NCBI GenBank assembly: GCA_002189035.1
Contig: NEEC01000129.1
Span: 1 to 35,544 of the forward strand
From: Utricularia gibba
Taxonomy: Eukaryota; Plantae; Magnoliophyta
DNA: 35,544 nt
Direction of reading: 5' to 3'
Part shown: positions 14,450 to 30,921 of the stretch, piece by piece
How positions within the stretch are numbered: position 1 is the first letter of the stretch
Layout of the letters: every line of letters starts with the position of its first letter
Program-made: the position numbers and the translations under genes
The notes under the pieces: model-generated
Database searches by the model: none
Told to the model about the DNA's origin: nothing
Seen by the model: only the letters and a program-made list of their open reading frames with translations

Positions 14450-16569
14450 TTACTTTTCTTCTGGTTGGATGGGAGGAGCTGCTTTCTCCACATCTTTATT
14501 GGCTTTTTCCCCTCTCCAGTACTTGATCCTTTTCACTGCGGTGGAGGCCTGAAATCCAGTGGAATTGTGGGTGGTTTATTTGGAATAACTGTGATGGGGT
14601 GGTGTCCTTTGTACCTCCTTTTCCCAGTTTGTTCTGTAAACGATCCAGAAGAGAATCAATGTCTGGACTATCGTCCCTGCTACCATTCCGTACCATATAC
14701 CCTGCAGAAAGAAGAAGAAGAAGATCATGCATCTCTTGACTTTTCCGGTTGGTTCCGGTGGATGAATGAACTTACGGCGGCGCCCATGTTGAGAGTGTAG
14801 CCCATGACCAAACCAAGAGGGACGCCGAACACGTAGTAGCACACGATGTTCACGTAGGCGATCAGCGATTGCCATCCGGCTCCGATCGCGACTCCTGCAT
14901 CGGATTATTTGTTTTAGATGATATGCATCACTTGGGCGGCGGATCAGGAAGCAAAAGAACCTGATAGAGCGGGCTGGATGCTGTTGACAACGATGGAGAA
15001 GGCCAGCAATGGGGTGAGATCATACACGATGGCCACGACCTCGTCGCTGTCGGTGAAGAGCGCCGGATATTGATCCTTCAAGACGATGAGGACGGTTGCG
15101 AATACGGTTCCGACGAGCAGCGCCCATATCACCATTACCACAACTGAAAATTTAGCAGTTCGCGGATGGGATGCTCCGAGCTCATTCGACACTCTTACAC
15201 TACGCAAATCAACACAGAAGATGTCACCGTGTTTGCTCAAGTGGGGACATCATCAATCAATCTATCTCTCACCTGATTGCAGCATTGAATCCAACTGCTA
15301 TCATGTTGGTGAATCCCAATATGTTTGTGCTGCACAAGATGCAGATTCTCAGATTTGGACATGTTTGAAACGACTGGTTTCTAAAGATTATATCTTGATA
15401 ACTGGGAGCATATCAACACAACTCACCAAACAGATAGAGCAGCAACAGCTACCTCAGCGTTCTTCAAGTAACCAGCCAGAAGAGTCAAAGCCATGAAATA
15501 CCATGTTTCCAAGCTGTAAGTAAACATGCCATGGTAAAAAGGGTGAATCTTTACAGGAATCTTGATCCACAACAGGGAAATACGATGAGTTACCACATCA
15601 TTACTGCAGATGCAAGAGAGAGCCTTACGAATCCCCATAGATTTTGTACCGCTCTCAAGCTGAATCCTGGCCAAGCTTTTCCGCAGGTTCCAGAAAGAAT
15701 GTAAATCGCTTGCGCTATCACAATGAACCACCACGAGGCGTCGAGAACCGCAGCACCGCCAGCTAGTCCCCAGCCGAATTTAAGCATAAAAAGCCAGCTA
15801 AAAAGTATGTGCAGGGCAAGAGCCGAAGCTGAGATCCAAGCCATGGCCATTATCTTGCTCTGCGCCTGCAAAAACTTGGCTGTCGGAAAATTCAAAGCGT
15901 AGGCGAAAAGCTGAGGAATCATCCACCAGGCCAATTTTCCGGCGACTTGAGAAATGCTCTGTTTCTGGCCAATTAGCAGCAAAAAGGGCAAGGCGAAAAT
16001 GTATAGAAACATCATAATCAGAGCAGTTCCGAGAAGAATAATCCATGATCTCTGCAAATAAACACCCAGCATATCAAGCTGCCCAGCCCCAAACGCCTGT
16101 CCACAAAGCGTTTCCACCGCGCTTCCCATTCCCAACTGCGAAAAACTCGAATCTTTGTCAACAAAATTACAAAGAAAAAAACCCATCATTCAAATTGGTT
16201 CAATACCATGACTCCCAGAGACAATCCCGCGATTACGGAGTTCTCGATCGAGAATGCGGATAATTCCAGCGTACCCACATGCCCCGCGAAAGTTTGCGTC
16301 GAACCTCCGAGCGTATATTGGCAAAGGGATGTGAAAATTGCTGGTCCAGCAAGATACCACAGCTTCCCCGACTCCTCCTTGAACGCCCAAAAAAACCCAT
16401 TAACATTCTCGATGGGCGGGATGTCGTCCTCACCGGCGACGAAGGAGGAGAAAACGGATAAGTTGGAGAGACGGTGGAAGGAAGATAGCCGCGGGGTAAC
16501 CTCCGGCACAACGTCATCGTCTTCCTCCGGCACAAGAAGCAATTGTTTGGCTTCGTTGTTGTCCGCCAT
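14450..16569 (-). CDS. MATE efflux transporter (DETOXIFICATION family, DTX29-33-like group); exons approx 16569-16207, 16135-15594, 15513-15427, 15329-15273, 15200-14961, 14895-14777, 14702-14616, 14548-14450
   Basis: [159 protein letters not shown]; eight-exon MATE structure. Confidence 0.95.
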
Positions 16570-17271
16570 TGTTACTCCCAAGAAAGGAATACAACGCACC
16601 AAGATTTAACCGGAGCTGCAACCACGTGTATCTGAAATATTGGACTGAAAAACGAATGGACTCGTTTCGCTCACCTGCCTGAGCGTGATGCATGGGTGCT
16701 GACCTATATCTCTTAACAATGAGATCTTTATCGGATCTCTGACCAGTAGGAATCAAATACGACTCGGCTCAACCACGTGCAAACCTACTTCCGGCAGCAC
16801 GAAGATGCAGGACAAATATGTAAACACCGCCGACCTTTTTTGTCTAAAAAAGAAACAACAGGAATTATGATCCAAAATTAAAATTCATTATTATTACCAG
16901 ATTTTTTAATTTTTTAAAAACCTATTCATAACATTAAAAAGCTTAATACGTTTAAAAGAAGTAAAAAAAATAAACAAATTAATATTTTTTTATCAGTAAA
17001 TAAAGGAATGTAATTCTATTTATGGCATTATTTATTTTCTGATTACCATTAACCCATGAAAAAAAAATAAATGCCCACCATCTTCCATTCTCACCCATAT
17101 TCAAATTTCGGATTTGATCCAAAAAACGAAATTTCACGTAAATTTCAGAAAAAATTATCAAATTTCCCAAAAAAGAAAATATTTTATTTCTGAAAAAATC
17201 GAAAATTTTGGGGTTGAAAACAACACGACAAAGGCGTCTGATCTAGACTTCGGAGGGTTGCCACGTGGACG

Positions 17272-17990
17272 CAAGTTCAGCGCCTAGCATTTTCCAGAGA
17301 GTTTTCTTCTATTCTCTTCTCTTCATTCAAAGGCATGATGCAGAGAGATTTCTTGAAATGTGTCGTTTTCTCAGGCCCCGGATATCTCCACACAACCAGA
17401 TGATCGCAGATTCCGAAGGGCAGAACTCTCGGATTAGGGTTTCACCGCCTATGGCGAATCAACGGACACTACCACGGCGGTAAGAAAAAACACCACCAGG
17501 ACGACCACGAGCACCACCCTCACCACTCCGACTCGTGTACTTTCATTCTAGAATGAACAGCGCAGCGCAGCTCGCCCAGGTTGACGGACGTTAACCGCCA
17601 CCGCCACCCACGTCTACCGTCGACCGTGCCACTGCCGCCCGCTTTGCTTTGTGCCCGCCACCGCCATCAACCACCACCACCAGCGGGCCTGTTGGGGCGC
17701 GGGCACGATCGTCCGTCGCTAGTTTAAGATTTGACTATGAGGCGTGGTTTGAAATTAAGGTATAACATTGATTTATAATGTGTTTAATAAAATTATTTTG
17801 TTTTGTATGAAGATATAATTATACTAATTATATGGGTATAATTATCATTATATCTATATAATAACTTCATATATGACTATATGTATATTCAATGAAAATA
17901 TGGATATTTTTTAAATCTACATATTTAGATTTATTTAAATTCAAATAATTTAAACTCACCAATATATCAACACACTAACGAAACAAAGAC
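17272..17990 (+). repeat. Dispersed repeat, copy 1 (GC-rich core then AT-rich tail); copy 2 at ~21421-22545
   Basis: 17395-17990 is nearly identical to 21950-22545, and 17272-17385 matches 21421-21560. No convincing ORF; probably transposon-derived. Confidence 0.85.
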
Positions 17991-18250
17991 TGATTATTCA
18001 GTCTATTAATTTGAAAATATAATAATATAATCCAAATAATACAAAAGAGTTTCACCATCATCAATGGTAAGTACCAGGTGTGACTGACGTGACCAATTTT
18101 CTTAGCCTATTCTCAGTCTCCGACCAAGAGGGCGCATGCGTTCCCCCGTCCACGAAAGGCGTTTGCTTCGAATGTCAAAATGTAGCTCCAAGTGTAGTAT
18201 ATATTTGTCTCCCTTGATCGGCGAGGAGCCTAAGTCAAGTTCAGGTCAGG

Positions 18251-18502
18251 ATGTTGAAACATATAGCTTTGGCTGTCTTCTTGCTGCTCGTGATCGCGCC
18301 ATGCTTGGCCTCTCCGGTCCACCGGAGGATGCCCGCGCTTGCAGTTTCCAAAAGGGGGATCATAGCCCGGCCTCCGGCGCCGGCGGCCAAAAATGGGTTT
18401 ATCAAGACACATTTAAATGTTGCAGATAACAGCGGGAAGCAGAATGAGATGTTGTTTATCCGAGATCCGCCTCCACCACTACTGGAGGGAGGAATGGTGT
18501 AA
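18251..18502 (+). CDS. Small secreted Pro-rich peptide precursor A (83 aa)
   Basis: Hydrophobic signal peptide MLKHIALAVFLLLVIAPCLAS, then AVSKR-GIIA-RPPAP-AAKN and C-terminal RDPPPPLLEGGMV*. TATA-like TATATAT ~45 bp upstream. Clear paralogy with the genes at 20114 and 23111. Confidence 0.75.
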   Translation: MLKHIALAVFLLLVIAPCLASPVHRRMPALAVSKRGIIARPPAPAAKNGFIKTHLNVADNSGKQNEMLFIRDPPPPLLEGGMV

Positions 18503-18594
18503 AGGTATTCCACGTTTGCGGCATCTACGCATCGTGACGCCGTTGTTTGTGTTGGCTCCGAGGTTTGTTATTTTTACAGTGATGTCGTTAGTGA

Positions 18595-19133
18595 TGTTGA
18601 GTGAGGATGAACATGAGATAAACCAGCAGCAAACTGTGAGAAATGTGGAGGACCCAGAACAGGAAAATAAAAATGTGTCGAGAGATAACGGGAGGAAGAA
18701 GAGAAAGGTCTGTCACCAACTCGGACTAGTTATACTGGACAGCAAGATGGGACACCAACAAAGATACTCCAACTCATCCACTTCAAGAAAATGGCCCAAC
18801 ATGAGGATATGGCCCAACGTGCTGAAGTCAATACTGTTGGAAGTCTTAGTGAGCAACGGGTAATCCCTAGAAGTAGGCGACCGTTGCTAAAGAACTATAA
18901 ATATGTGTATTTTTGTATAACACAATAACTTTGTTTTTTTCTCTAAGGAGAAATACATATATCAAATTAGCCACATCCTTTTCTCATATCTGTTCTACAA
19001 GCCTCACACACTGATATAAATTGCTATCAATTAGACCTATTTTAGGTCAAATATGTTGGGTCCAATCCATTACACTTTACCTATGGACTTTGCTTGCAGT
19101 CTTGAGTGTATGCTTCGTGCTTGTGTGTTACAG
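18595..19133 (+). mobile_element. Degenerate LTR-like fragment (possible solo LTR)
   Basis: Begins TGTTG and ends GTGTTACA, with an internal CTATAAATA at ~18895. Related copies lie at ~21563-21948 and, inverted and more diverged, at ~21171-21400. No target-site duplication found. Confidence 0.35.
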
Positions 19134-19362
19134 TCATCTTAAATAAATGGAGTTTAGTCACAAATTTTCACTTTACTCTTATTAGAAAAAAAAAAAGCAA
19201 ATAATATATCAATAAATATAATCAAATATATAAAAAAAATTATCATTAATAATGAATTGTATTCAATTTTTTTCCAATGAAATCTATATTTTTTATTTAC
19301 TTAAATTTCATGTATGTTCGTCTCATTCATAAGATTTTTAATTTCAACAAACATATCTGCAT

Positions 19363-19374
19363 TGGTATCAAAGC
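19363..19374 (+). other. PBS-like motif TGGTATCAAAGC (tRNA-iMet primer-binding-site variant)
   Basis: One mismatch from the canonical plant LTR-retrotransposon PBS TGGTATCAGAGC, and preceded by ...CA-T. No gag/pol ORF follows. Confidence 0.3.
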
Positions 19375-20113
19375 AGCCTCACTTTGGTCCTTTCGATACT
19401 TTTATCTTTCCCAAATTCATGAGAAGATTTACCAGAATCCCCAGGAACACTTCTACTCAAGAGAAGACCTATGAGAATTCTGCCTGTTTGAAAAGGAGTG
19501 CGTGCAATCTTCTTCTTGAGTTCTGAGTGATCGTTGTATCACTTAGTGTGGGGATTTTGTTATCACCAAGTGCATGTCAGTACTGCTATTGTATCTGTGA
19601 ACACACAGTGAATTGCCTCTTGGTTTGGTTTGGATGAACTCTAGCCAATGATATTTCCCAGTTCTTACGGTTTTATCTGGTAAAAAAAAACAATGTCTCT
19701 AAAATAACATAAATCTAAAAATACTTTTTATTACATAGTTTTAACTTTTCGTTTAATTTCATTTTTTAATTAAAAATCATATTTTAATAATTATACTTTT
19801 ATGAATTTTAAATTATGTTAAAAATTTAATAATAAAATAATAATTATTCTGAATTTTTCAGAATTTTTATTATATTTATAATTCAATATATACATTCAAA
19901 TTTCAAATTATGTATTTTTCTAAAATCTAAACACCCTTACTATTTTTCAAAATTAACGTGTCGGTGATGCGGCCCGGCCCATTCGCAGTCTCTGACCAGG
20001 TGGGCGTCTGCGTTCCTACCTGACATTCCGTTCTCAAAAGGCGTTTGCTGTCCACAACTTGCTCCAAATGTGTTATATATTCATCTCCCTTCCTCAGCAG
20101 TAGCCAACTCAAG

Positions 20114-20411
20114 ATGAAGAAACCAACAACAGCTTTGGCTGTCTTCCTGCTGCTCCTGATTGCACCATGCTTGGCCTCTCCTCTCCGCCAGAGTATGTTC
20201 GGGCTCGCACTTGCAGATTCCAAAAGGGAGATGGAAATCAGGCCTCCGGCGCCGATGACAAGACAGTTTAAAATCTCGGAGGTCCCCAGTCCGCCTCCAC
20301 CACAACCACCACCACCACCGGAGGGGAATTCCTGTATCAACCACCACTACCGGAGGGGAATTGCTGTATCCACCACAACCATCACCAACACCGGAGGGGG
20401 AATTGCTGTAA
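20114..20411 (+). CDS. Small secreted Pro-rich peptide precursor B (99 aa if one G is restored in each of two G-runs; the as-assembled ORF runs to 20476)
   Basis: Signal peptide MKKPTTALAVFLLLLIAPCLAS, ADSKR-EMEI-RPPAP, PSPPPPQ, then three nucleotide repeats. These read PEGEFLY / PEGELLY / PEGELL* when G-runs 20323-26 and 20355-58 are read as five G, as in the third repeat. The TAA at 20409 aligns with the stop of paralog A. Confidence 0.75.
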
Positions 20412-20584
20412 AGTTGTACCATGTTTATGGCATCTGTTGCTTCTTTGACGATTTTAGAGTTACGGTCTCCCTGTAGTTCTTGGTGTTGAGCAATGCATTA
20501 TCAAGTTTTCTGTAAGATAAATTGGGTTATCAGTGAATGAGTCGAACTCGACGGAGGAACATGCCTGCGATTGGCTATCTAAGA

Positions 20585-20872
20585 CGATGTCAATAGTGGC
20601 TCAAGCTCGTTGCTTGAAGAAACAAACGCGCCTGCTTTGTTCTAGAATGAAAAGCCCGCGCAAGGAGACTACACAGTCCACACGTATACATTGAAAAGGT
20701 TAACAAGAAACAAACGCGCCTACGCAATGTAATGGTTTTCGAAGTGACCAAAGACTTGACGCGTTCCAGGTCAAGGGTCCTCAATATCGGATCAGGAGTG
20801 TGGAATCTACTTTCCGCCCAAGGAAAAACAGGGTTGGTGAAAGAGTAGAGTTCGCCTTCCTTGTATATACAA
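20585..20872 (+). promoter_or_regulatory. CGCG-box/W-box-rich promoter of peptide gene D (duplicated at ~23547-23834 for gene E)
   Basis: ACGCGC at 20626 and 20714 (within a 17-bp direct repeat aagaaacaaacgcgcct), CCGCGC at 20656, TTGACGCGT at 20756-64, GGTCAA (W-box TTGACC on the minus strand) at 20769, and TATA-like gtatatac ~75 bp before the ATG. Confidence 0.55.
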
Positions 20873-20939
20873 GTGCCAAGGCTCATCTCTCTTGTTGCAA
20901 AGGGCAACTGAGAGAAAGGAGGAGTCTTTAGCATTGGAA

Positions 20940-21195
20940 ATGAAGAAACTTGATAGCAGAGCCACTGCTGCATTCATGGTGACTCTCTTGCTGCTTATCG
21001 TGATGATTACACACTGTTTTGCCGCCGGCAAAGCAACAGCAGCAGTTCCTCTTCAAGGTAATTCATGCTTGCACTAGCAGTGATCCATCACAGGCACTGA
21101 AAATTGGTCGTTTGTTTTAAGGTTCAGAGATGTCTATCCCATCTCGCAACAACCGGAAGATGTTTCCGTTTCATGGACTTGGGTCTTCTCCTTAA
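20940..21195 (+). pseudogene. Secreted peptide precursor D, truncated paralog of E; exons 20940-21057 and 21128-21195
   Basis: Same signal-peptide exon and 70-nt GT-AG intron as E. Exon 2 matches E only up to RNNRKMFPF, then switches to unrelated repeat-derived sequence (HGLGSSP*), losing the conserved SRR...PIPAP block. Confidence 0.6.
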
Positions 21196-21400
21196 GTGTG
21201 GACTCCTTAGTATTTGATTCATATTCGCGAGAGGGCCATTTCATGGAATTAGGATTCAATATAATAAGGTCCATATCTGTCTCATGTCTTCTCTTCGTCT
21301 TCTTACCACCAGCATCGTTCCTGCGAAATCCCTGAGTTCTCAGCTTCAACATCAGCTTCATTCTCACACAATTCATTCTTCAATTCATCTAGGTCAACCT
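21171..21400 (-). mobile_element. Inverted, diverged LTR-like fragment abutting the truncation point of gene D
   Basis: The reverse complement shares blocks (agaagacatg, tt-at-xx-tgxa, aaatggccc) with 18595-18900 and 21563-21800. Confidence 0.3.
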
Positions 21401-21420
21401 TCAGGAGGGATGCTGCGTGA

Positions 21421-22545
21421 ACGCAAGTTCAGCGCCGATGAAGAAGCCTATGGCTTCCTGGTTAGCATCTTGCAGACAGTTTTCTTCTATTCTCTTCTCT
21501 TCATTCAAGGGCATGATGCAGAGAGATTTCTTGAAATGGGTCGTTTCTTAAGCCCCGGAAATTGATGATGAGTGAGGACGAATATGAGACAACGCAGCAG
21601 CAAGCTATTAGAAATGCGGAAGACTCAAACCTAGAAATCAGGAGTGTGTGGAAAGATAACAGGAGGAAGAAGAAGACATGCCAGCATCTCGCGCTAATTA
21701 TGCTGGACAGCAAAGTAAGGAAATGAACTACAAACGATGATCCAGCAATTCCCAGAAGTAGGCAACCGTTACCCACCATTGAACTATAAATATGTATAAA
21801 TATGTGTATCCAGGCACGTCCTAAACTAACTTTGTATGCAGAAAAATTCCTCATTGAGGAAAACAATTTCCAAAATCGTACAATATCTGCCTCCCATATT
21901 CGTCCTACAAAGCCACATACTCTTATACATTGATCAACGGATTGTACACTACCAGATGATCGAAGATTCCGAGAGGGAGAAATCTCGGATTAGGGTTTCA
22001 CCGCCTATGGCGAATCAACGGACACTACCACGGCGGTAAGAAAAACCACCACCAGGACGACCACGAGCACCACCCTCACCACTCCGACTCGTGTGCTTTC
22101 ATTCTAGAATAGACAGCGCAGCGCAGCTCACCCAGGTTGACGGACGTTAACCGCCACCGCCACCCACGTCTACCGTCGACCGTGCCACTGCCGCCCGCTT
22201 TGCTTTTTGCCCGCCACCGCCATCAACCAGTACCACCAGCGGGCCCGTTGGGGCGCGGGCACGATCGTCCGTCGCTAGTTTAAGATTTGACTATGAGGCG
22301 TGGTTTGAAATTAAGGTATAACATTGATTTATAGTGTATTTAATAAAATTATTTTGTTTTGTATCAAGATATAATTATACTAATTATATGGTTATAATTA
22401 TCATTATATTTATATAATAACTTCATATATGGTTATATGTATATCCAATGAAAATATGGATATTTTTAAATCTATGTATTTGGATTTATCTAAATTCAAA
22501 TAATTTAAACTTACCACTATATCAATACACCAACGAAACAAAGAC
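21421..22545 (+). repeat. Dispersed repeat copy 2, interrupted by a ~385-bp LTR-like insert (21563-21948)
   Basis: The flanks match 17272-17385 and 17395-17990. The insert matches 18595-19010 (atgagtgaggaYgaaYatgaga...gaactataaatatgt). Confidence 0.8.
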
Positions 22546-22984
22546 ATGTGATTGTGACTCAGCCTGTTAACCGGTTTTTCTTGTTTTAGGGTTAATCAAG
22601 TACCAATTTTTAGAATTTTTTTATTAAAAGTAGTACTGCCATTGCTTTTATCAAATTGCAGGGTAATGATTGTTTATTTATAAATTTTAGTATTATCTAT
22701 AGTTCTTGGATAAATATTTCACACTATCAATTCTTAATTTTGCTAATTTTTCAATACTTGTTTTGTTCTTGTAATTGTATGTAAATGACATTTAAAATCA
22801 ATGCATTTTTCTGTTTTTTTATACTCAATGTTTGAGTTAATGAAAACTTAATAATAATATTTAATGATCTTTATATCTATAGATGATAAATAATGATATA
22901 AGATATTATTTTATACTTTATTATATAATAATAATATAAATTTTAATATGATATATATATTGACCGGTTAAACTCAGACGCATT

Positions 22985-24133
22985 CAGTCTCTGACCAGGT
23001 GGGCGTCTGCGTTCGTACCTCACACCGTTCTCAGAAGGCGTTTGCCGTCCACAACTTGCTCCAAATGTGTTATATATTCATCTCCCTTCCTCAGCAGGAG
23101 CCAACTCAAGATGAAGAAACCAACAGCAGCTTTGGCTGTCTTCCTGCTGCTCCTGATTGCACCATGCTTGGCCTCTCCGCTCCGCCAGAGTATGTCCGGG
23201 CTAGCAGATTCTAAAAGGCAGATCGACATCAGGCCTCCGGCGCCGATTAAAAATCAGTTTAGAATCTGGAGTGTCCCCAGTCCGCCTCCACCACGACCAA
23301 CAACACCGGAGGGGAATGGCTGTATACACCACATCGACAACCACCACCACCACCGGAGGGGGAATTGCTGTAAAGTTGTACCATGTTTATGGCATATGTT
23401 GCTTCTTTGACGATTTTAGAGTTACGGTCTCCCTGTAGTTCTTGATGTTGAGCAATGCATTATCAAGTTTTCTGTAAAATAAATTGGGTTATCAATGAAT
23501 GAGTCGAACTCGACGGAGGAACATGCCTGCGTTTGGCTATCTAAGACGATGTCAATAGTGGCTCAAGCTCGTTGCTTGAAGAAACAAACGCATCTGCTTT
23601 GTTCTAGAATGAAAAGCCCGCGCAAGGAGACTACACAGTCCACACGTATACATCGAAAAGATTAAGAAGAAACAAACGCGCCTACGCAATGTAATGGTTT
23701 TCGAAGTGACCAAAGACTTGACGCGTTCCAGGTCAAGGGTCCTCAATATCAGATCAGGAGTGTGGAATCTACTTTCCGCCCAAGGAAAAACAGGGTTGGT
23801 GAAAGAGTAGAGTTCGCCTTCCTTGTATATACAAGTGCCAAGGTTCATCTCCCTTGTAGCCAAGGCCAACTGAGAGAAAGGAGGAGTCTTTAGCATTGGA
23901 TATGAAGAAACTTGATAGCAGAGCCACTGCTGCATTTATGGTGACTCTCTTGCTGCTTATCGTGATGATTACACACTGCTTTGCCGCCGGCAAAGCAACA
24001 GCAGCAGTTCCTCTTCAAGGTAATTCATGCTTGCACTAGCAGTGATCCCATCACAGGCACTGAAAATTGGTCGTTTGTTTTAAGTTTCAGAGATGTCTAT
24101 CCCATCTCGCAACAACCGGAAGATGTTTCCGTT
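22985..24133 (+). repeat. Tandem segmental duplication unit 2 (module C+E)
   Basis: Aligns by eye base-for-base with 19986-21170 apart from scattered substitutions and small indels. Confidence 0.95.
23111..23373 (+). CDS. Small secreted Pro-rich peptide precursor C (87 aa if one G is restored; the as-assembled ORF runs to 23410)
   Basis: Signal peptide MKKPTAALAVFLLLLIAPCLAS, ADSKR-QIDI-RPPAP-IKNQ, PSPPPPR. With five G at 23311-14 it reads PEGEWLYTPHRQPPPPPEGELL*, using the same TAA-AG stop as A and B. Confidence 0.75.
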
Positions 24134-24212
24134 CGCAGTTTCGAGGCGGTCGATCGACTTCCCGATTCCAGCGCCCATGGCCAACGTGCGTGATCCACCG
24201 CCTGCTCCTTGA
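23902..24212 (+). CDS. Spliced small secreted peptide precursor E (79 aa); exons 23902-24019 and 24091-24212
   Basis: MKKLDSRATAAFMVTLLLLIVMITHCFAAGKATAAVPLQ-E-MSIPSRNNRKMFPFAVSRRSIDFPIPAPMANVRDPPPAP*. Donor CAAG|GTAATT, acceptor TTTCAG|AG, 71-nt intron, phase-consistent. It shares AVS[KR]R, P.PAP..N and RDPPP with gene A. Confidence 0.75.
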
Positions 24213-24424
24213 TTTGGGTCTCACTGAACGCTACGAAGTGATTTGAAAGCTTATAAGTTGAATAAAGTATGGAACTTTCATGATATGAACTGAAAGGCAC
24301 ATCCTCTCCATCTAAGATTTATACAGAGCACGCGTGTGTTCATTTTAAAATCTCAACATCAAAGTGCCTCGTTGATACGCAATTCGCTTTATCATCTTCA
24401 CTGATGCCGCAGTCATAATCTGCA

Positions 24425-26402
24425 TCAGTTATGGTGCACTTCGTTGGGCAACGTGGGAAGCTTCCTGAACGCGTGTTTCCTGCACCGCTCGAAAATGCTG
24501 TCGTATATCAGATCGAATTCAACTCCAGCTCTTTCTCTGTTTATTATAAACAGAATATGATCGCCTTCCACAACTTTGTAGTACCTGGAACAGATCAGTG
24601 CAAAATGGTGAACAACAGGGAATGGAAATGGAAACTCAAATGCACCAAATGATTTCAGAGCAACCAACCATATCCCTGGCTGCAGAGGATGGAACTCTGA
24701 ATCATGGGTAACAAACTGGCTTGGATGTTCAACAGGGAAACGAGGATGCGTCATTGAGATTGTGTTCAGGGCTCCATCGTTTTCCCACCAGTCTTCGTCC
24801 CTACGCGCATGGATATGCAAGATTTCAAACGTAAAGCAAGGGCTCAGATGAGACATTGGCACCCCCTGACTCACCTGTAACCTTTGTACGGAGGAGTAGC
24901 ATCCGATGGATGCCGCCATTGGCTCATCTGAAGCACCCGGAGGAATAACATCGGGTGTATCCCGAATACGCCGGAGGGGACGGTGGTACCCATGAATTTT
25001 CTAGTACGTTTGGTGGCGTAGCTGAAGTAGTATGTATCAGGAAATGTACGTATATGGCTGTTTAACCTGATGGAGCCCTGGATTGTGAGATCAGGGAGGA
25101 TCCAATCTCCAGATGCAAATGGTCCTGCTTTGCCCATTAGGCAGGAAATGAGGCCCCGGATTCCGATCCTCTTCCACGATAACTCGAAATGATCAAACCC
25201 GAAATTGTAATAGTATTTCAGCATTGGAATGTCAAACCAGTCATAAAGAAGAACACCTATCCTGCATAGCTGCAGGAGGCAGACCGGCTTCAGTGACTTG
25301 CCATCCTCTGGCCTGTGAAGAAGAAGCATGCTTCCATGAAGCTGAATGGGCGCTGTTTATTTAAAAGCAAGAAACAGAGAACAACAATCAGGCAGAAACA
25401 TACTGCATTCCATCCAAATAAGTCCTTGTTGTGCCATTGAAAGCCCCAGATAATGAGGTTATGCTTATAACCCAGTTTGCTGAAGTGTTTTCATGGCCTT
25501 TGAACATCTGCAAACGAATCAGAATCGACGCTTTGATAAAAAAAAACAGTTTGTATGAACAATTTGTAACATGAATTAAGTGCATCTTACCTTGTCAGCA
25601 AGCATCTGCTGCAAGACTCTTACAACCTGAGCTCCGGCAGAGTGCCCGACAAAATGAATTGGATGGTCCTCATCCCATTCAGGATAATGCCCTGAAATAC
25701 GATGGAAGCTTCATAGAAGTGGGAACAACAAGAAAATAAAACAACTCACAAGAATGAAGACAAAAGCAACCGACCGATTTCATAGATTCTTCCAAACTGA
25801 GAGTGCCCACAAGCTTTACTGTGTTCCTCCCCGTAATCCACTTGGCCTCCCTTAGATAGTAAAACAACTCCCTGGCACTAAAACATGAAGAGAACATATA
25901 CAATCTTCAGATTAAGTTCTAGGCACAGAGCTTATAGGGTTTATTAAGTTAGTTTAAATCACACTAACCGATCATAAATACTGGTTAATGAACCTAAATC
26001 AGGGACAAGAACATTATCATCTTTCTTTTCAGCCCCGGCAAAGTAGGACAATCCTCCCAATCTCTTCGGAGCATACAGGAAAACTTCAGCATTTGACTAT
26101 GAAAACTTTGATCCTAAAAAAACTCAAAATTGCAGAATAAATATGCATACCCCTTTTCCAAAACCAAAGATCCCATGAACCAAAACAATCGGAGGAAGGC
26201 CGTGACCCCGCGTGGAGCCTGTATATTCTTCCCTTTTGTAAAAATCAGTCAAATTTGGGCCAAAGAGCCAATCGCTTAAAGTCATTGACAAATCCCCAGC
26301 CACAGCTGTGCTAAATATGTAGAAGCCATACACAATATGCACCAGAGAACTCACGAACAGTTCAGCCAATTGCAGGGACAACACCCACCATTTCCCCATC
26401 AT
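24425..26402 (-). CDS. Alpha/beta-hydrolase superfamily lipase; exons approx 26402-26151, 26063-25969, 25880-25775, 25691-25591, 25507-25404, 25312-24875, 24802-24669, 24586-24425; -1 frameshift at ~25851
   Basis: LPPIVLVHGIFGFGKGRLGGLSYFAGAEKKD, nucleophile elbow PIHFVGHSAGAQV, SLSGAFNGTTRTYLDG, WWENDGALNTISMTHP, and WYYKVVEGDHILFI. Confidence 0.93.
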
Positions 26403-30408: not shown

Positions 30409-30921
30409 CTAGTTTTGCAGGACGACTGCCAAGCAGTTTTCCACCTGCCTGTTTAGAATTGTGGTGTACTTTGCAAGCGGGGAGTTGACATGAAACTCGG
30501 CCAGCGCATCGTCGCAGTCGTTGCTCAAGGCTGCGCTGAGATGCGTCACCGCTGTGCCTTTGTCGTTGGACTGCAGGCCTTCGAGGCTCGTCTGCAAGTC
30601 GTCGACGAGACGGTCGAAGCCCTCGACGCACGTCCCCATGACGGCGTCCTGGCTCGTGCTGTCCATGGTTGAGATGGCTGGCTGCAGCATACCAAGCTTG
30701 GCCTGGGCACGGCGTCCCGCCGCAAGGGCAGCTTTCACTGCATTGATGGAGGCGCCTTCCAAGGTGGTGGCGCCATTCACCATTCTGTTGCACAGTCGCT
30801 TGTGGGTCGCGGTGCGGCACATTGGATTGACGTCAGGGAGACCCACAGCGTCACTAGTCGAGAACCCCATGATCAGCAGCAGTACAACAGCAAAGGCACA
30901 GGTGACCATCTGGGAAGCCAT
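30409..30921 (-). CDS. Plant invertase / pectin methylesterase inhibitor (PMEI-domain) protein, 170 aa, intronless
   Basis: Signal peptide, N-terminal Cys pair (MCRTATHKRLC), helical core with TC.E.FD..VDDLQ and LSAALS.DCDDAL, and C-terminal NCLAV. Confidence 0.85.
   Translation of the reverse strand: MASQMVTCAFAVVLLLIMGFSTSDAVGLPDVNPMCRTATHKRLCNRMVNGATTLEGASINAVKAALAAGRRAQAKLGMLQPAISTMDSTSQDAVMGTCVEGFDRLVDDLQTSLEGLQSNDKGTAVTHLSAALSNDCDDALAEFHVNSPLAKYTTILNRQVENCLAVVLQN

What the first reader, a model, noticed from the sequence alone, without database searches (positions are those of the whole stretch)
20300..23373. Hidden internally repeated PxPEGE(F/L/W)LY motif in precursors B and C, masked by G-run frameshifts: possible multi-copy (polyprotein) peptide precursor
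Seen: B has three copies of the unit ccggagggg(g)aattScTgta and C has two. In both genes the last copy has five G and reads PEGELL-TAA, which aligns codon-for-codon with the stop of paralog A (LEGGMV-TAA-AG). The earlier copies show only four G. Adding one G to each puts everything in one frame: B ...PSPPPPQPPPPPEGEFLYQPPLPEGELLYPPQPSPTPEGELL* (99 aa) and C ...PSPPPPRPTTPEGEWLYTPHRQPPPPPEGELL* (87 aa). The as-assembled tails (GNSCINHHYRRG..., NCCKVVPCLWH) are then artefacts. Inference: repeat copy number varies between paralogs (1, 3, 2), as in multi-peptide precursors such as HypSys or multi-domain CLE/CEP genes. The stop codon appears to be a TAT-to-TAA change of the repeat's Tyr codon.
Basis: partly seen in the sequence, partly recalled or inferred. 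Interest (0 to 1): 0.8.

Follow-up and report, generated by a model that had tools for sequence, protein, structure and literature searches.

The report
Secreted proline-rich peptide genes, repeats unmasked
Two neighbouring small plant genes look frameshifted only because the assembly dropped one G in three G-runs; read correctly they encode secreted proline-rich proteins of an orphan family, but nothing shows that the two or three repeats in their tails are cut into separate peptides.

Summary
The 19-20-nt unit CCGGAGGGG(G)AATTSCTGTA occurs three times in gene B and twice in gene C. In the assembly the G-runs are 4,4,5 and 4,5.

Contigs from two DNA and two RNA runs (four studies) all carry an extra G at 20355-58. 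The one run covering C copy 1 carries an extra G at 23311-14. Two DNA contigs across B are exactly two letters longer than the assembly, so a second +1 lies at or beside 20323-26.

The true ORFs are B 99 aa and C 87 aa, both ending PEGELL-stop. B is transcribed from about 20106, roughly 25-30 nt downstream of a TATA box.

New here:
- The repeat units are 42+33+42 nt in B and 39+48 nt in C. Each starts at codon position 3 and ends in TA, so the Tyr codon is TA of the old stop plus T of the next unit. The tail grew by tandem duplication through the stop codon, so stop became Tyr, not the reverse.
- RNA contigs show shorter in-frame forms: two-copy B and a one-copy C-like form.
- No homolog was found in any library searched, including 1.84 billion proteins.

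Release of separate peptides is untested. The unit cores are almost identical as DNA, so their similarity shows recent duplication, not selection. The scan also noted this array under s1-219308.

The parts
20114..20411 (+). Gene B coding sequence. It encodes 99 aa once the two missing G are counted; the assembly frameshifts it at 20323-26 and 20355-58.
   Evidence: translation with N at the breaks; DNA and RNA contigs with the extra letters; RNA contig spanning 20106-20569.
23111..23373 (+). Gene C coding sequence. It encodes 87 aa once the missing G is counted; the assembly frameshifts it at 23311-14.
   Evidence: In one search, 'G put in behind 23310' in DNA run X2 at 4.3 of 4.3 depth.
18251..18502 (+). 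Paralog A, an intact 83-aa ORF with a single degenerate tail unit (18472-18501) ending LEGGMV-TAA.
20323..20326 (+). G-run of B copy 1: 4 G in the assembly, and most likely 5 G in reality.
   Evidence: This position lies in the zone the tool skipped as repeat (20285-20327), so no row is listed. DNA contigs X1 rec1 (617 letters on 615 nt, 0 other letters, 2 gaps) and X2 rec12 (252 on 250 nt, 2 gaps) require a second +1 besides the one at 20354. That the added letter is G, and sits in this run, is inferred.
20355..20358 (+). G-run of B copy 2: 4 G in the assembly, 5 G in reads.
   Evidence: table 4: 'G put in behind 20354' at full depth in all four runs (X1 and X2 DNA; X10 and X7 RNA).
23311..23314 (+). 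G-run of C copy 1: 4 G in the assembly, 5 G in reads.
   Evidence: table 4: 'G put in behind 23310' in X2, the only run with a colinear contig there.
20296..20336 (+). B repeat unit 1 (42 nt in reality): T + CCA-rich spacer + CCGGAGGGGGAATTCCTGTA.
   Evidence: unit dissection.
20337..20368 (+). B repeat unit 2 (33 nt in reality).
20369..20410 (+). B repeat unit 3 (42 nt), followed by the A at 20411 that completes the TAA stop.
23287..23324 (+). C repeat unit 1 (39 nt in reality).
23325..23372 (+). C repeat unit 2 (48 nt), followed by the A at 23373 that completes the TAA stop.
20073..20113 (+). B core promoter and leader: TATATATT box about 25-30 nt upstream of the transcript start at about 20106, leaving an 8-nt 5' UTR.
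   Evidence: In one search, table 7, RNA contig X10 rec9 carries 24 non-genomic letters ending in GGG directly before 20106. Reading these as a template-switch adaptor is my inference.
23902..24212 (+). Gene E, a two-exon relative (exon 1 23902-24019, intron 24020-24084, exon 2 24085-24212). It shares the S-R-R ... PAP ... PPP core but has no PEGELL tail.
   Evidence: In one search, E-type RNA contigs show the homologous GT..AG joint when laid on copy D.

Best explanation
B and C are intact, transcribed genes of a lineage-restricted family (A, B, C, E in this array) of small secreted proline-rich precursors. Their apparent frameshifts come from the assembly dropping one G in three 5-G runs. 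Each protein has a signal peptide (probably cleaved after CLA), a short pro-region ending in a conserved S-K/R-R site, a conserved (R/P)(P/I)PAP core, and an S/D-PPPP block. In B and C this is followed by a tail of 3 or 2 in-frame units, Pro(n)-E-G-E-(F/L/W)-L-Y, the last ending PEGELL-stop. The tail grew by tandem duplication of a roughly 42-nt segment whose 3' breakpoint lies inside the stop codon (TA|A). Each junction therefore reads TA+T = Tyr and translation runs on into the next copy's stop. Inferred, not shown: the protein enters the secretory pathway, the contiguous prolines are hydroxylated and arabinosylated, and the pro-region is removed at the K/R-R site. That would leave one Hyp-rich (glyco)peptide of about 50-60 residues with a fast-evolving tail of variable copy number, rather than a polyprotein cut into PEGExLY peptides.
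For: Reads:
- An extra G at 20354 appears in 4 of 4 runs from 4 studies, and at 23310 in the one covering run.
- Two DNA contigs across B are exactly +2 letters; one of them otherwise has 0 differences over 615 nt.

Frame:
- One frame runs from the ATG to a stop homologous to A's stop.

Expression:
- RNA contigs from two studies span 20106-20569, with an adaptor-like 5' end about 25-30 nt downstream of a TATA box.

Secretion signal:
- The N-termini have KK, a 12-residue hydrophobic core (mean Kyte-Doolittle 2.9-3.4) and C-L-A before S-P.

Family core:
- Columns S22, M28, A34, S36, R38, P45-A46-P47 and P60-P62 are invariant across A, B, C and E.

Duplication mechanism:
- Units are 42, 33, 42 nt (B) and 39, 48 nt (C), with a single 30-nt unit in A.
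- All start with the T at codon position 3 of CCT and end in CTG TA. The last unit is followed by A AG.

ORF is kept:
- All five units, and both shorter RNA forms (minus 33 and minus 45 nt), are multiples of 3 and end at the same stop.

Assembly error signature:
- Other first-stage notes on this genome list many -1 lesions in G/C homopolymers (unchecked leads).
Against: - The first G-run (20323-26) is supported only through contig lengths, because the tool skipped that zone.
- All runs are kept as contigs, not raw reads, so minority 4-G alleles cannot be excluded.
- No ortholog or homolog was found anywhere, so there is no comparative evidence that the protein is functional.
- Protein-level evidence is absent.
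- The RNA contigs do not show the 3-copy B or the 2-copy C form as such; they show one unit less.
- CCA-repeat slippage favours 3n changes by itself, which weakens the ORF-maintenance argument.
- pN > pS between B and C is not significant on its own (p = 0.24).
Confidence: 0.7

Rival explanations
1. One reading: B and C are polyprotein precursors, and each PEGE(F/L/W)LY unit is excised as a separate bioactive hydroxyproline peptide, as in HypSys or multi-domain CLE/CEP genes. Copy number would then act as signal amplification.
For: - In-frame units of 11-16 residues match the size range of mature modified plant peptides.
- Copy number differs between paralogs and between DNA and RNA forms while the frame is always kept.
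- HypSys precursors also lack recognisable processing sites and yield several Hyp-rich peptides (PMC11371470).
- Multi-CLE-domain proteins exist (PMC2254619).
Against: - No basic, Asp or other known cleavage motif lies between units.
- The unit cores are nearly identical at nucleotide level, so their similarity is explained by recent duplication.
- The Tyr is a by-product of the duplication junction.
- Relatives A (one degenerate unit) and E (none) share only the upstream core, which is the better candidate for the active part.
- There are no orthologs to show conservation of the unit.
Confidence: 0.12
2. Young orphan ORFs without peptide function: the genes are transcribed, but the tail, and perhaps the whole mature region, drifts neutrally. 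Repeats come and go by slippage in a CCA-rich tract.
For: - No homolog in 1.84 billion representative proteins, Pfam or metagenomes.
- The mature region diverges about five times faster than the flanking non-coding DNA (pN 0.167 against 0.03-0.04, p = 6e-8).
- Copy number is unstable.
Against: - The signal peptide and promoter are strongly conserved among paralogs (pN 0.02).
- The S-K/R-R, PAP and PPP columns are invariant across four paralogs, including the structurally different E.
- Every length variant keeps the frame and the stop.
- A mature region that changes faster than neutral flanks points to positive selection, or to gene conversion of the flanks, rather than plain drift.
Confidence: 0.13
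3. The 4-G runs are real in the sequenced individual, as frameshifted alleles, and the 5-G versions belong to other individuals.
For: The assembly shows 4 G at three sites while the two terminal copies, in the same sequence context, were called with 5 G.
Against: - Four runs from four studies all show 5 G at full contig depth.
- The X1 contig is identical to the assembly over 615 nt except for the two added letters.
- Three independent -1 mutations, all in the same motif and all compensating to one frame, are far less likely than a consensus-calling error.
- Other windows of this genome were noted with the same -1 G/C signature.
Confidence: 0.04

Closest known systems
Hydroxyproline-rich systemin (HypSys) precursors of Solanaceae and Convolvulaceae
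   Same: A small secreted precursor with a signal peptide and Pro-rich segments containing Ser-Pro(n) blocks that are expected to be hydroxylated and pentosylated. There is more than one similar Pro-rich unit per precursor and no recognisable processing motif (PMC11371470).
   Different: No detectable sequence similarity: the profile search over 1.84 billion proteins gave no family hit. HypSys peptides lie scattered between long non-Pro spacers in a 146-165-aa precursor, whereas here the units are head-to-tail at the extreme C-terminus and nearly identical. Release, glycosylation and defence activity are untested. The taxon is probably outside Solanales.
Multi-domain CLE and CEP precursors
   Same: A short peptide-sized unit is repeated in one secreted precursor, and copy number differs between paralogs. 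This has been proposed as signal amplification (PMC2254619).
   Different: There is no CLE or CEP motif (no terminal H-N, no G-x-S-P-G-x-G-H). The units are not separated by spacers with processing sites. The repeats are very young.
IDA/IDL peptides (PIPPSAPSKRHN)
   Same: The conserved core of the family, (R/P)(P/I)PAP, recalls the PIPPSAP part of IDA. Both are small secreted precursors with basic sites upstream.
   Different: The defining C-terminal S-K-R-H-N / His-Asn is absent in A, B, C and E (IDA motif from my own knowledge).
Extensin-like and proline-rich cell-wall proteins (HRGPs, ENOD2/ENOD12-type)
   Same: SPPPP and Pro-Pro-x-Glu-type repeats, tandem repetition by slippage, Tyr in the repeat.
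   Different: Only 2-3 units and a product under 100 aa. There are no YxY or VYK cross-link motifs. A conserved non-repetitive pro-region and core precede the repeats.

Membership tests
HypSys precursors | N-terminal signal peptide directing the precursor to the secretory pathway | tested here: met
   KK n-region, a 12-residue hydrophobic core (mean KD 2.9-3.4) and small residues at -3/-1 (C-L-A|S). No dedicated predictor was available.
HypSys precursors | Sequence kinship with the Solanaceae or Convolvulaceae preproHypSys proteins | tested here: not met
   The HMMER profile of A, B, C and E against 1.84 billion representatives returned one hit at E <= 0.001, a 2167-aa repeat protein. The word-based search found none.
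HypSys precursors | Several Hyp-rich glycopeptides of 15-20 aa are released from one precursor | not testable with these tools
   Needs peptidomics. The sequence shows 2-3 Pro-rich units but no cleavage motif.
HypSys precursors | Wound or defence induction and alkalinisation activity | not tested
   The RNA runs are coded and their conditions are unknown.
Multi-domain CLE / CEP | Presence of the CLE (R-x-x-P-x-G-P-x-P-x-H-N) or CEP (…P-G-x-S-P-G-x-G-H) motif in each unit | tested here: not met
   The units read Pro(n)-E-G-E-(F/L/W)-L-Y. Pfam scans of the N-terminal parts of B and C (up to the first break), all of A and E exon 2 found nothing significant; the repeat tails were too short to scan. 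The reference motifs are from my own knowledge.
IDA/IDL | C-terminal P-S-[AG]-P-S-x-x-H-N motif | tested here: not met
   Alignment A1 shows PAP but no H-N in any of the four paralogs.
Tyr-sulfated peptides (PSK, PSY, RGF, CIF) | Asp directly before the sulfated Tyr (D-Y) | tested here: not met
   The Tyr is preceded by Leu (F-L-Y, L-L-Y, W-L-Y). The D-Y rule is from my own knowledge.
Extensins / PRPs | Long arrays of SPPPP or PPxxK repeats with Tyr cross-link motifs | tested here: not met
   One SPPPP block, 2-3 units, and a total length of 87-99 aa.

The most novel reading that the evidence does not exclude
B and C are a HypSys-like system that arose independently in another lineage. In this reading they are polymorphic precursors whose C-terminal Hyp-glycopeptide unit is multiplied by duplications through the stop codon, with each unit released as a signal or defence peptide, so that dose is set by copy number (3/2 in the genome accession, 2/1 in the RNA accessions).
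Probability: 0.12. Interest if true: 0.65.

Novelty: new member of a known kind. Interest (0 to 1): 0.4.

Why it matters
Practically, three single-base assembly errors hide two real genes. The as-assembled ORFs would give wrong His/Cys-rich proteins, and none of A, B or C (as assembled) is in the protein collection checked. The case adds read-level proof, at three sites, to the genome-wide suspicion of -1 errors in G/C homopolymers.

Biologically, it documents an expressed orphan family of secreted Pro-rich precursors with a conserved signal peptide and a fast-changing mature part. It also gives a clean example of how a protein tail can be lengthened: a tandem duplication with one breakpoint inside the stop codon turns stop into Tyr and re-uses the copied stop.

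If the units were shown to be released, this would be an independent invention of a multi-copy hydroxyproline-peptide precursor outside Solanales.

Tried and rejected
- **Intron explanation for the frame changes.** No GT..AG of workable size lies between the copies, and the RNA contigs are colinear there apart from the added G.
- **k-mer collapse as the cause of the shorter RNA forms.** The copies share at most about 21 nt, less than the 31-nt word that I understand Logan's assembler to use (the k value is my own knowledge; the tool output only speaks of a 31-letter word index), so collapse is unlikely.
- **RT template switching.** It could explain the B form, whose deletion lies between CAACCACCAC repeats. 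It does not explain the C-like form, which has no microhomology at the joint, an extra CCG, and one mismatch in each flank. This remains unresolved.
- **Homolog searches, all blank.** The word-based protein search found nothing. The exhaustive HMMER profile search gave only a spurious 2167-aa repeat protein. Pfam gave nothing significant. The ESM Atlas gave nothing of weight (best score 0.81, below the 0.9 lead level). The JGI metagenome scan by protein pattern was blank, as was the scan by the 20-nt motif. Exact look-ups of A and of as-assembled B and C found nothing.
- **Rfam.** No RNA family in 17900-24600.
- **A second local example of a homopolymer frameshift.** The two lipase ORFs at 24425-25329 turned out to be separated by an ordinary GT..AG intron.
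- **The 'C put in behind 21084' row.** This is not an assembly error. Those contigs carry 10 other letters and are E-type sequence laid on copy D.
- **Organism.** It is coded. The only clue is a neighbouring pectin-methylesterase-inhibitor gene whose single hit is 47% identical to an Erythranthe guttata protein, which would fit a lamiid eudicot with a compact genome. I did not pursue this.
Full report
**What is in the sequence**

The window is plant nuclear DNA. Between a MATE transporter gene (minus strand, about 14700-16580) and a lipase gene (about 24400-26400) lies a small array of short genes on the + strand:
- A, 18251-18502.
- B, ATG at 20114.
- D, ATG at 20941.
- C, ATG at 23111.
- E, ATG at 23902.

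B+D and C+E are two copies of a roughly 3-kb duplication. The unit CCGGAGGGG(G)AATTSCTGTA sits at 20318, 20350 and 20391 in B and at 23306 and 23353 in C. The assembly has G-runs of 4, 4, 5 and 4, 5. Tandem Repeats Finder reports the B array independently, with period 32 at 20308-20381.

Copy 1 of each gene is in the ATG frame. Successive copies are 32, 41 and 47 nt apart, each one short of a multiple of three.

**Are the 4-G runs real?**

I laid contigs of two DNA runs (X1, X2) and two RNA runs (X10, X7), from four different studies, on 19950-23450.
- All four runs show 'G put in behind 20354' at full depth.
- X2, the only run with a colinear contig over C copy 1, shows 'G put in behind 23310'.
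- The first B run lies in a zone the tool skipped as repetitive (20285-20327), so no row is printed for it.
- However, the X1 contig covering 20095-20709 has 617 letters for 615 positions, with 0 other letters and 2 gaps. The X2 contig covering 20169-20418 has 252 letters for 250 positions, also with 2 gaps.
- A second single-letter insertion therefore lies in or next to 20323-26. That it is a G in that run is an inference from the other two sites.

Short-read-derived contigs contradicting the assembly at exactly the three predicted sites, while otherwise identical to it, is what an assembly undercall looks like. Other first-stage notes on this genome list many -1 lesions in G/C homopolymers (unchecked leads).

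**The genes are real and expressed**

RNA contigs from two studies cover B from 20106 to 20569 and from 20169 to 20429. The X10 contig carries 24 non-genomic letters ending in GGG directly before 20106. I read these as a template-switch adaptor, which would place the transcript start 8 nt upstream of the ATG and about 25-30 nt downstream of TATATATT.

The N-termini have two lysines, a 12-residue hydrophobic core (mean Kyte-Doolittle 2.9-3.4) and C-L-A before S-P, as expected of a cleavable signal peptide. After the conserved K-R site the product has 31-34% Pro and no Cys.

**Family**

Aligning A, the N-terminal parts of B and C, and exon 2 of E gives invariant S, M, A, S-x-R, P-A-P and P-P-P columns. 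This matches the S[KR]R-x4-[RP][PI]PAP core noted by another first-stage note (s1-219308). E ends straight after the PPP block. A has one degenerate tail unit, LEGGMV-stop. Only B and C have repeats.

Nothing related was found elsewhere:
- Word-based protein search.
- HMMER profile search over 1.84 billion representatives, which gave one spurious repeat protein.
- Pfam.
- ESM Atlas, best score 0.81, below lead level.
- Two metagenome scans.
- Rfam.

A and the as-assembled B and C proteins are also absent from the protein collection, so the genes appear to be unannotated.

**How the repeats arose**

Cutting the read-corrected sequence after every CTGTA gives units of 42, 33 and 42 nt in B and 39 and 48 nt in C. 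A has a single 30-nt unit.

Every unit begins with the T that is the third base of a CCT codon, just before CCA CCA C. Every unit ends with CTG TA. The last unit is followed by A AG, so its TA is completed to the stop TAA, and that stop aligns with A's stop, with the 3' UTR continuing to align.

The internal Tyr codons are thus TA, the first two bases of the old stop, plus T, the first base of the next unit. The simplest history is a tandem duplication of the last roughly 14 codons with its 3' breakpoint inside the stop codon. This destroys the stop in the upstream copy and lets translation run into the downstream copy. A further duplication (or loss) and small CCA-type indels followed.

**Is it a polyprotein?**

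The evidence here neither shows nor excludes it, and I rate it unlikely (about 0.12).

For:
- The units are peptide-sized (11-16 aa).
- Every length variant keeps the frame and the stop. That covers five genomic units and two shorter RNA forms: a two-copy B of 88 aa and a one-copy C-like form of 72 aa.

Against:
- The 20-nt cores are almost identical at DNA level and differ only in the F/L/W codon. Their similarity shows recency, not selection.
- No recognisable cleavage motif separates the units.
- The residues conserved across the whole family lie upstream, in the core.

Comparing B with C gives the following:

| Region | Divergence |
|---|---|
| Signal peptide | pN 0.02 |
| 5' and 3' flanks | 0.03-0.04 |
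| Mature region, non-synonymous | pN 0.167 |
| Mature region, synonymous | pS 0.079 |

The mature-region pN is significantly above the flanks (Fisher p = 6e-8). pN against pS alone is not significant (p = 0.24). This pattern of conserved signal and fast mature part fits diversifying selection, or gene conversion restricted to the flanks. It is common in secreted defence and signalling peptides.

**Most likely working model (inferred)**

The steps I consider most likely are:
1. Entry into the ER through the signal peptide.
2. Hydroxylation and arabinosylation of the contiguous prolines (the Ser-Hyp4 rule of hydroxyproline-rich glycoproteins; established knowledge).
3. Removal of the pro-region at the K/R-R site.
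4. Secretion of one Hyp-rich (glyco)peptide with a variable tail.

**Unexplained**

Both RNA studies show B with 23 letters where the genome has 55 (56 in reality). This is consistent with loss of one 33-nt unit between two CAACCACCAC repeats. X7 shows only a 78-nt C-like contig that skips 23309-23352, has an extra CCG at the joint, and has one mismatch in each flank. These may be alleles of other accessions, further paralogs or, for B, reverse-transcription artefacts.

**Comparison with known systems**

The nearest analogue in kind is the HypSys precursor: a secreted protein yielding several Hyp-rich glycopeptides, with processing unknown, restricted to Solanaceae and Convolvulaceae (PMC11371470; PMC11756074). 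Multi-domain CLE proteins are a second analogue (PMC2254619). Membership in either is not supported, because there is no sequence kinship and no defining motif. IDA-like, Tyr-sulfated and extensin classes each fail a defining feature (see the membership table).

**Verdict**

The frameshift-artefact prediction is confirmed by reads. The repeat architecture is real and its origin is explained. The polyprotein function is unproven. The finding is of moderate interest: a corrected annotation and a neat mechanism of tail growth in an orphan secreted-peptide family.

Noticed in passing
window 20285-20339 and 23309-23352: RNA contigs from two studies carry shorter, still in-frame forms: B with one unit less (88 aa) and a C-like form with one unit (72 aa; extra CCG at the joint, one mismatch in each flank). 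DNA contigs show the full 3- and 2-copy forms. These could be alleles, extra paralogs or an RT artefact; this is undecided.
   Followed up: partly
window 20941-21196 (gene D) and 21141-21814: D is a truncated copy of E. Its exon 2 matches E only up to 21170, then ends early (…MFPFHGLGSSP-stop) without the PAP core. An RNA contig with 0 mismatches (X7 rec21) spans 21141-21266 and 21391-21814 with a 124-nt GT..AG intron, so the D locus is transcribed into a longer spliced RNA.
   Followed up: partly
window 19986-20113, 22985-23110, about 18110-18250: A promoter block of about 130 nt is 96% identical between B and C and recognisably shared with A (CAGTCTC[TC]GACCA…GGCGTTTGC…TATATATT). It is better conserved than the mature coding region.
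   Followed up: partly
window 17390-17689 vs 21946-22245; 18560-18740 vs 21562-21726: A 300-nt GC-rich element (95% identical) followed by similar AT-rich DNA precedes both A and C. An acidic/basic ORF-like segment (…SEDE…QQQ…RKK…LDSK) follows both A and D. The array is built from more repeated modules than the peptide genes alone.
   Followed up: no
window 20200-20400 vs 23195-23360: Between B and C the mature-peptide region has pN 0.167, about five times the divergence of the UTRs and flanks (0.03-0.04), while the signal peptide has pN 0.02. This suggests diversifying selection, or gene conversion limited to the flanks.
   Followed up: partly
window 30412-30921 (minus strand): An intact single-exon pectin-methylesterase-inhibitor gene. 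Its only database relative is 47% identical (Erythranthe guttata), and its exact sequence is not in the collection. This genome's proteins seem to be largely absent from the public protein sets searched.
   Followed up: no
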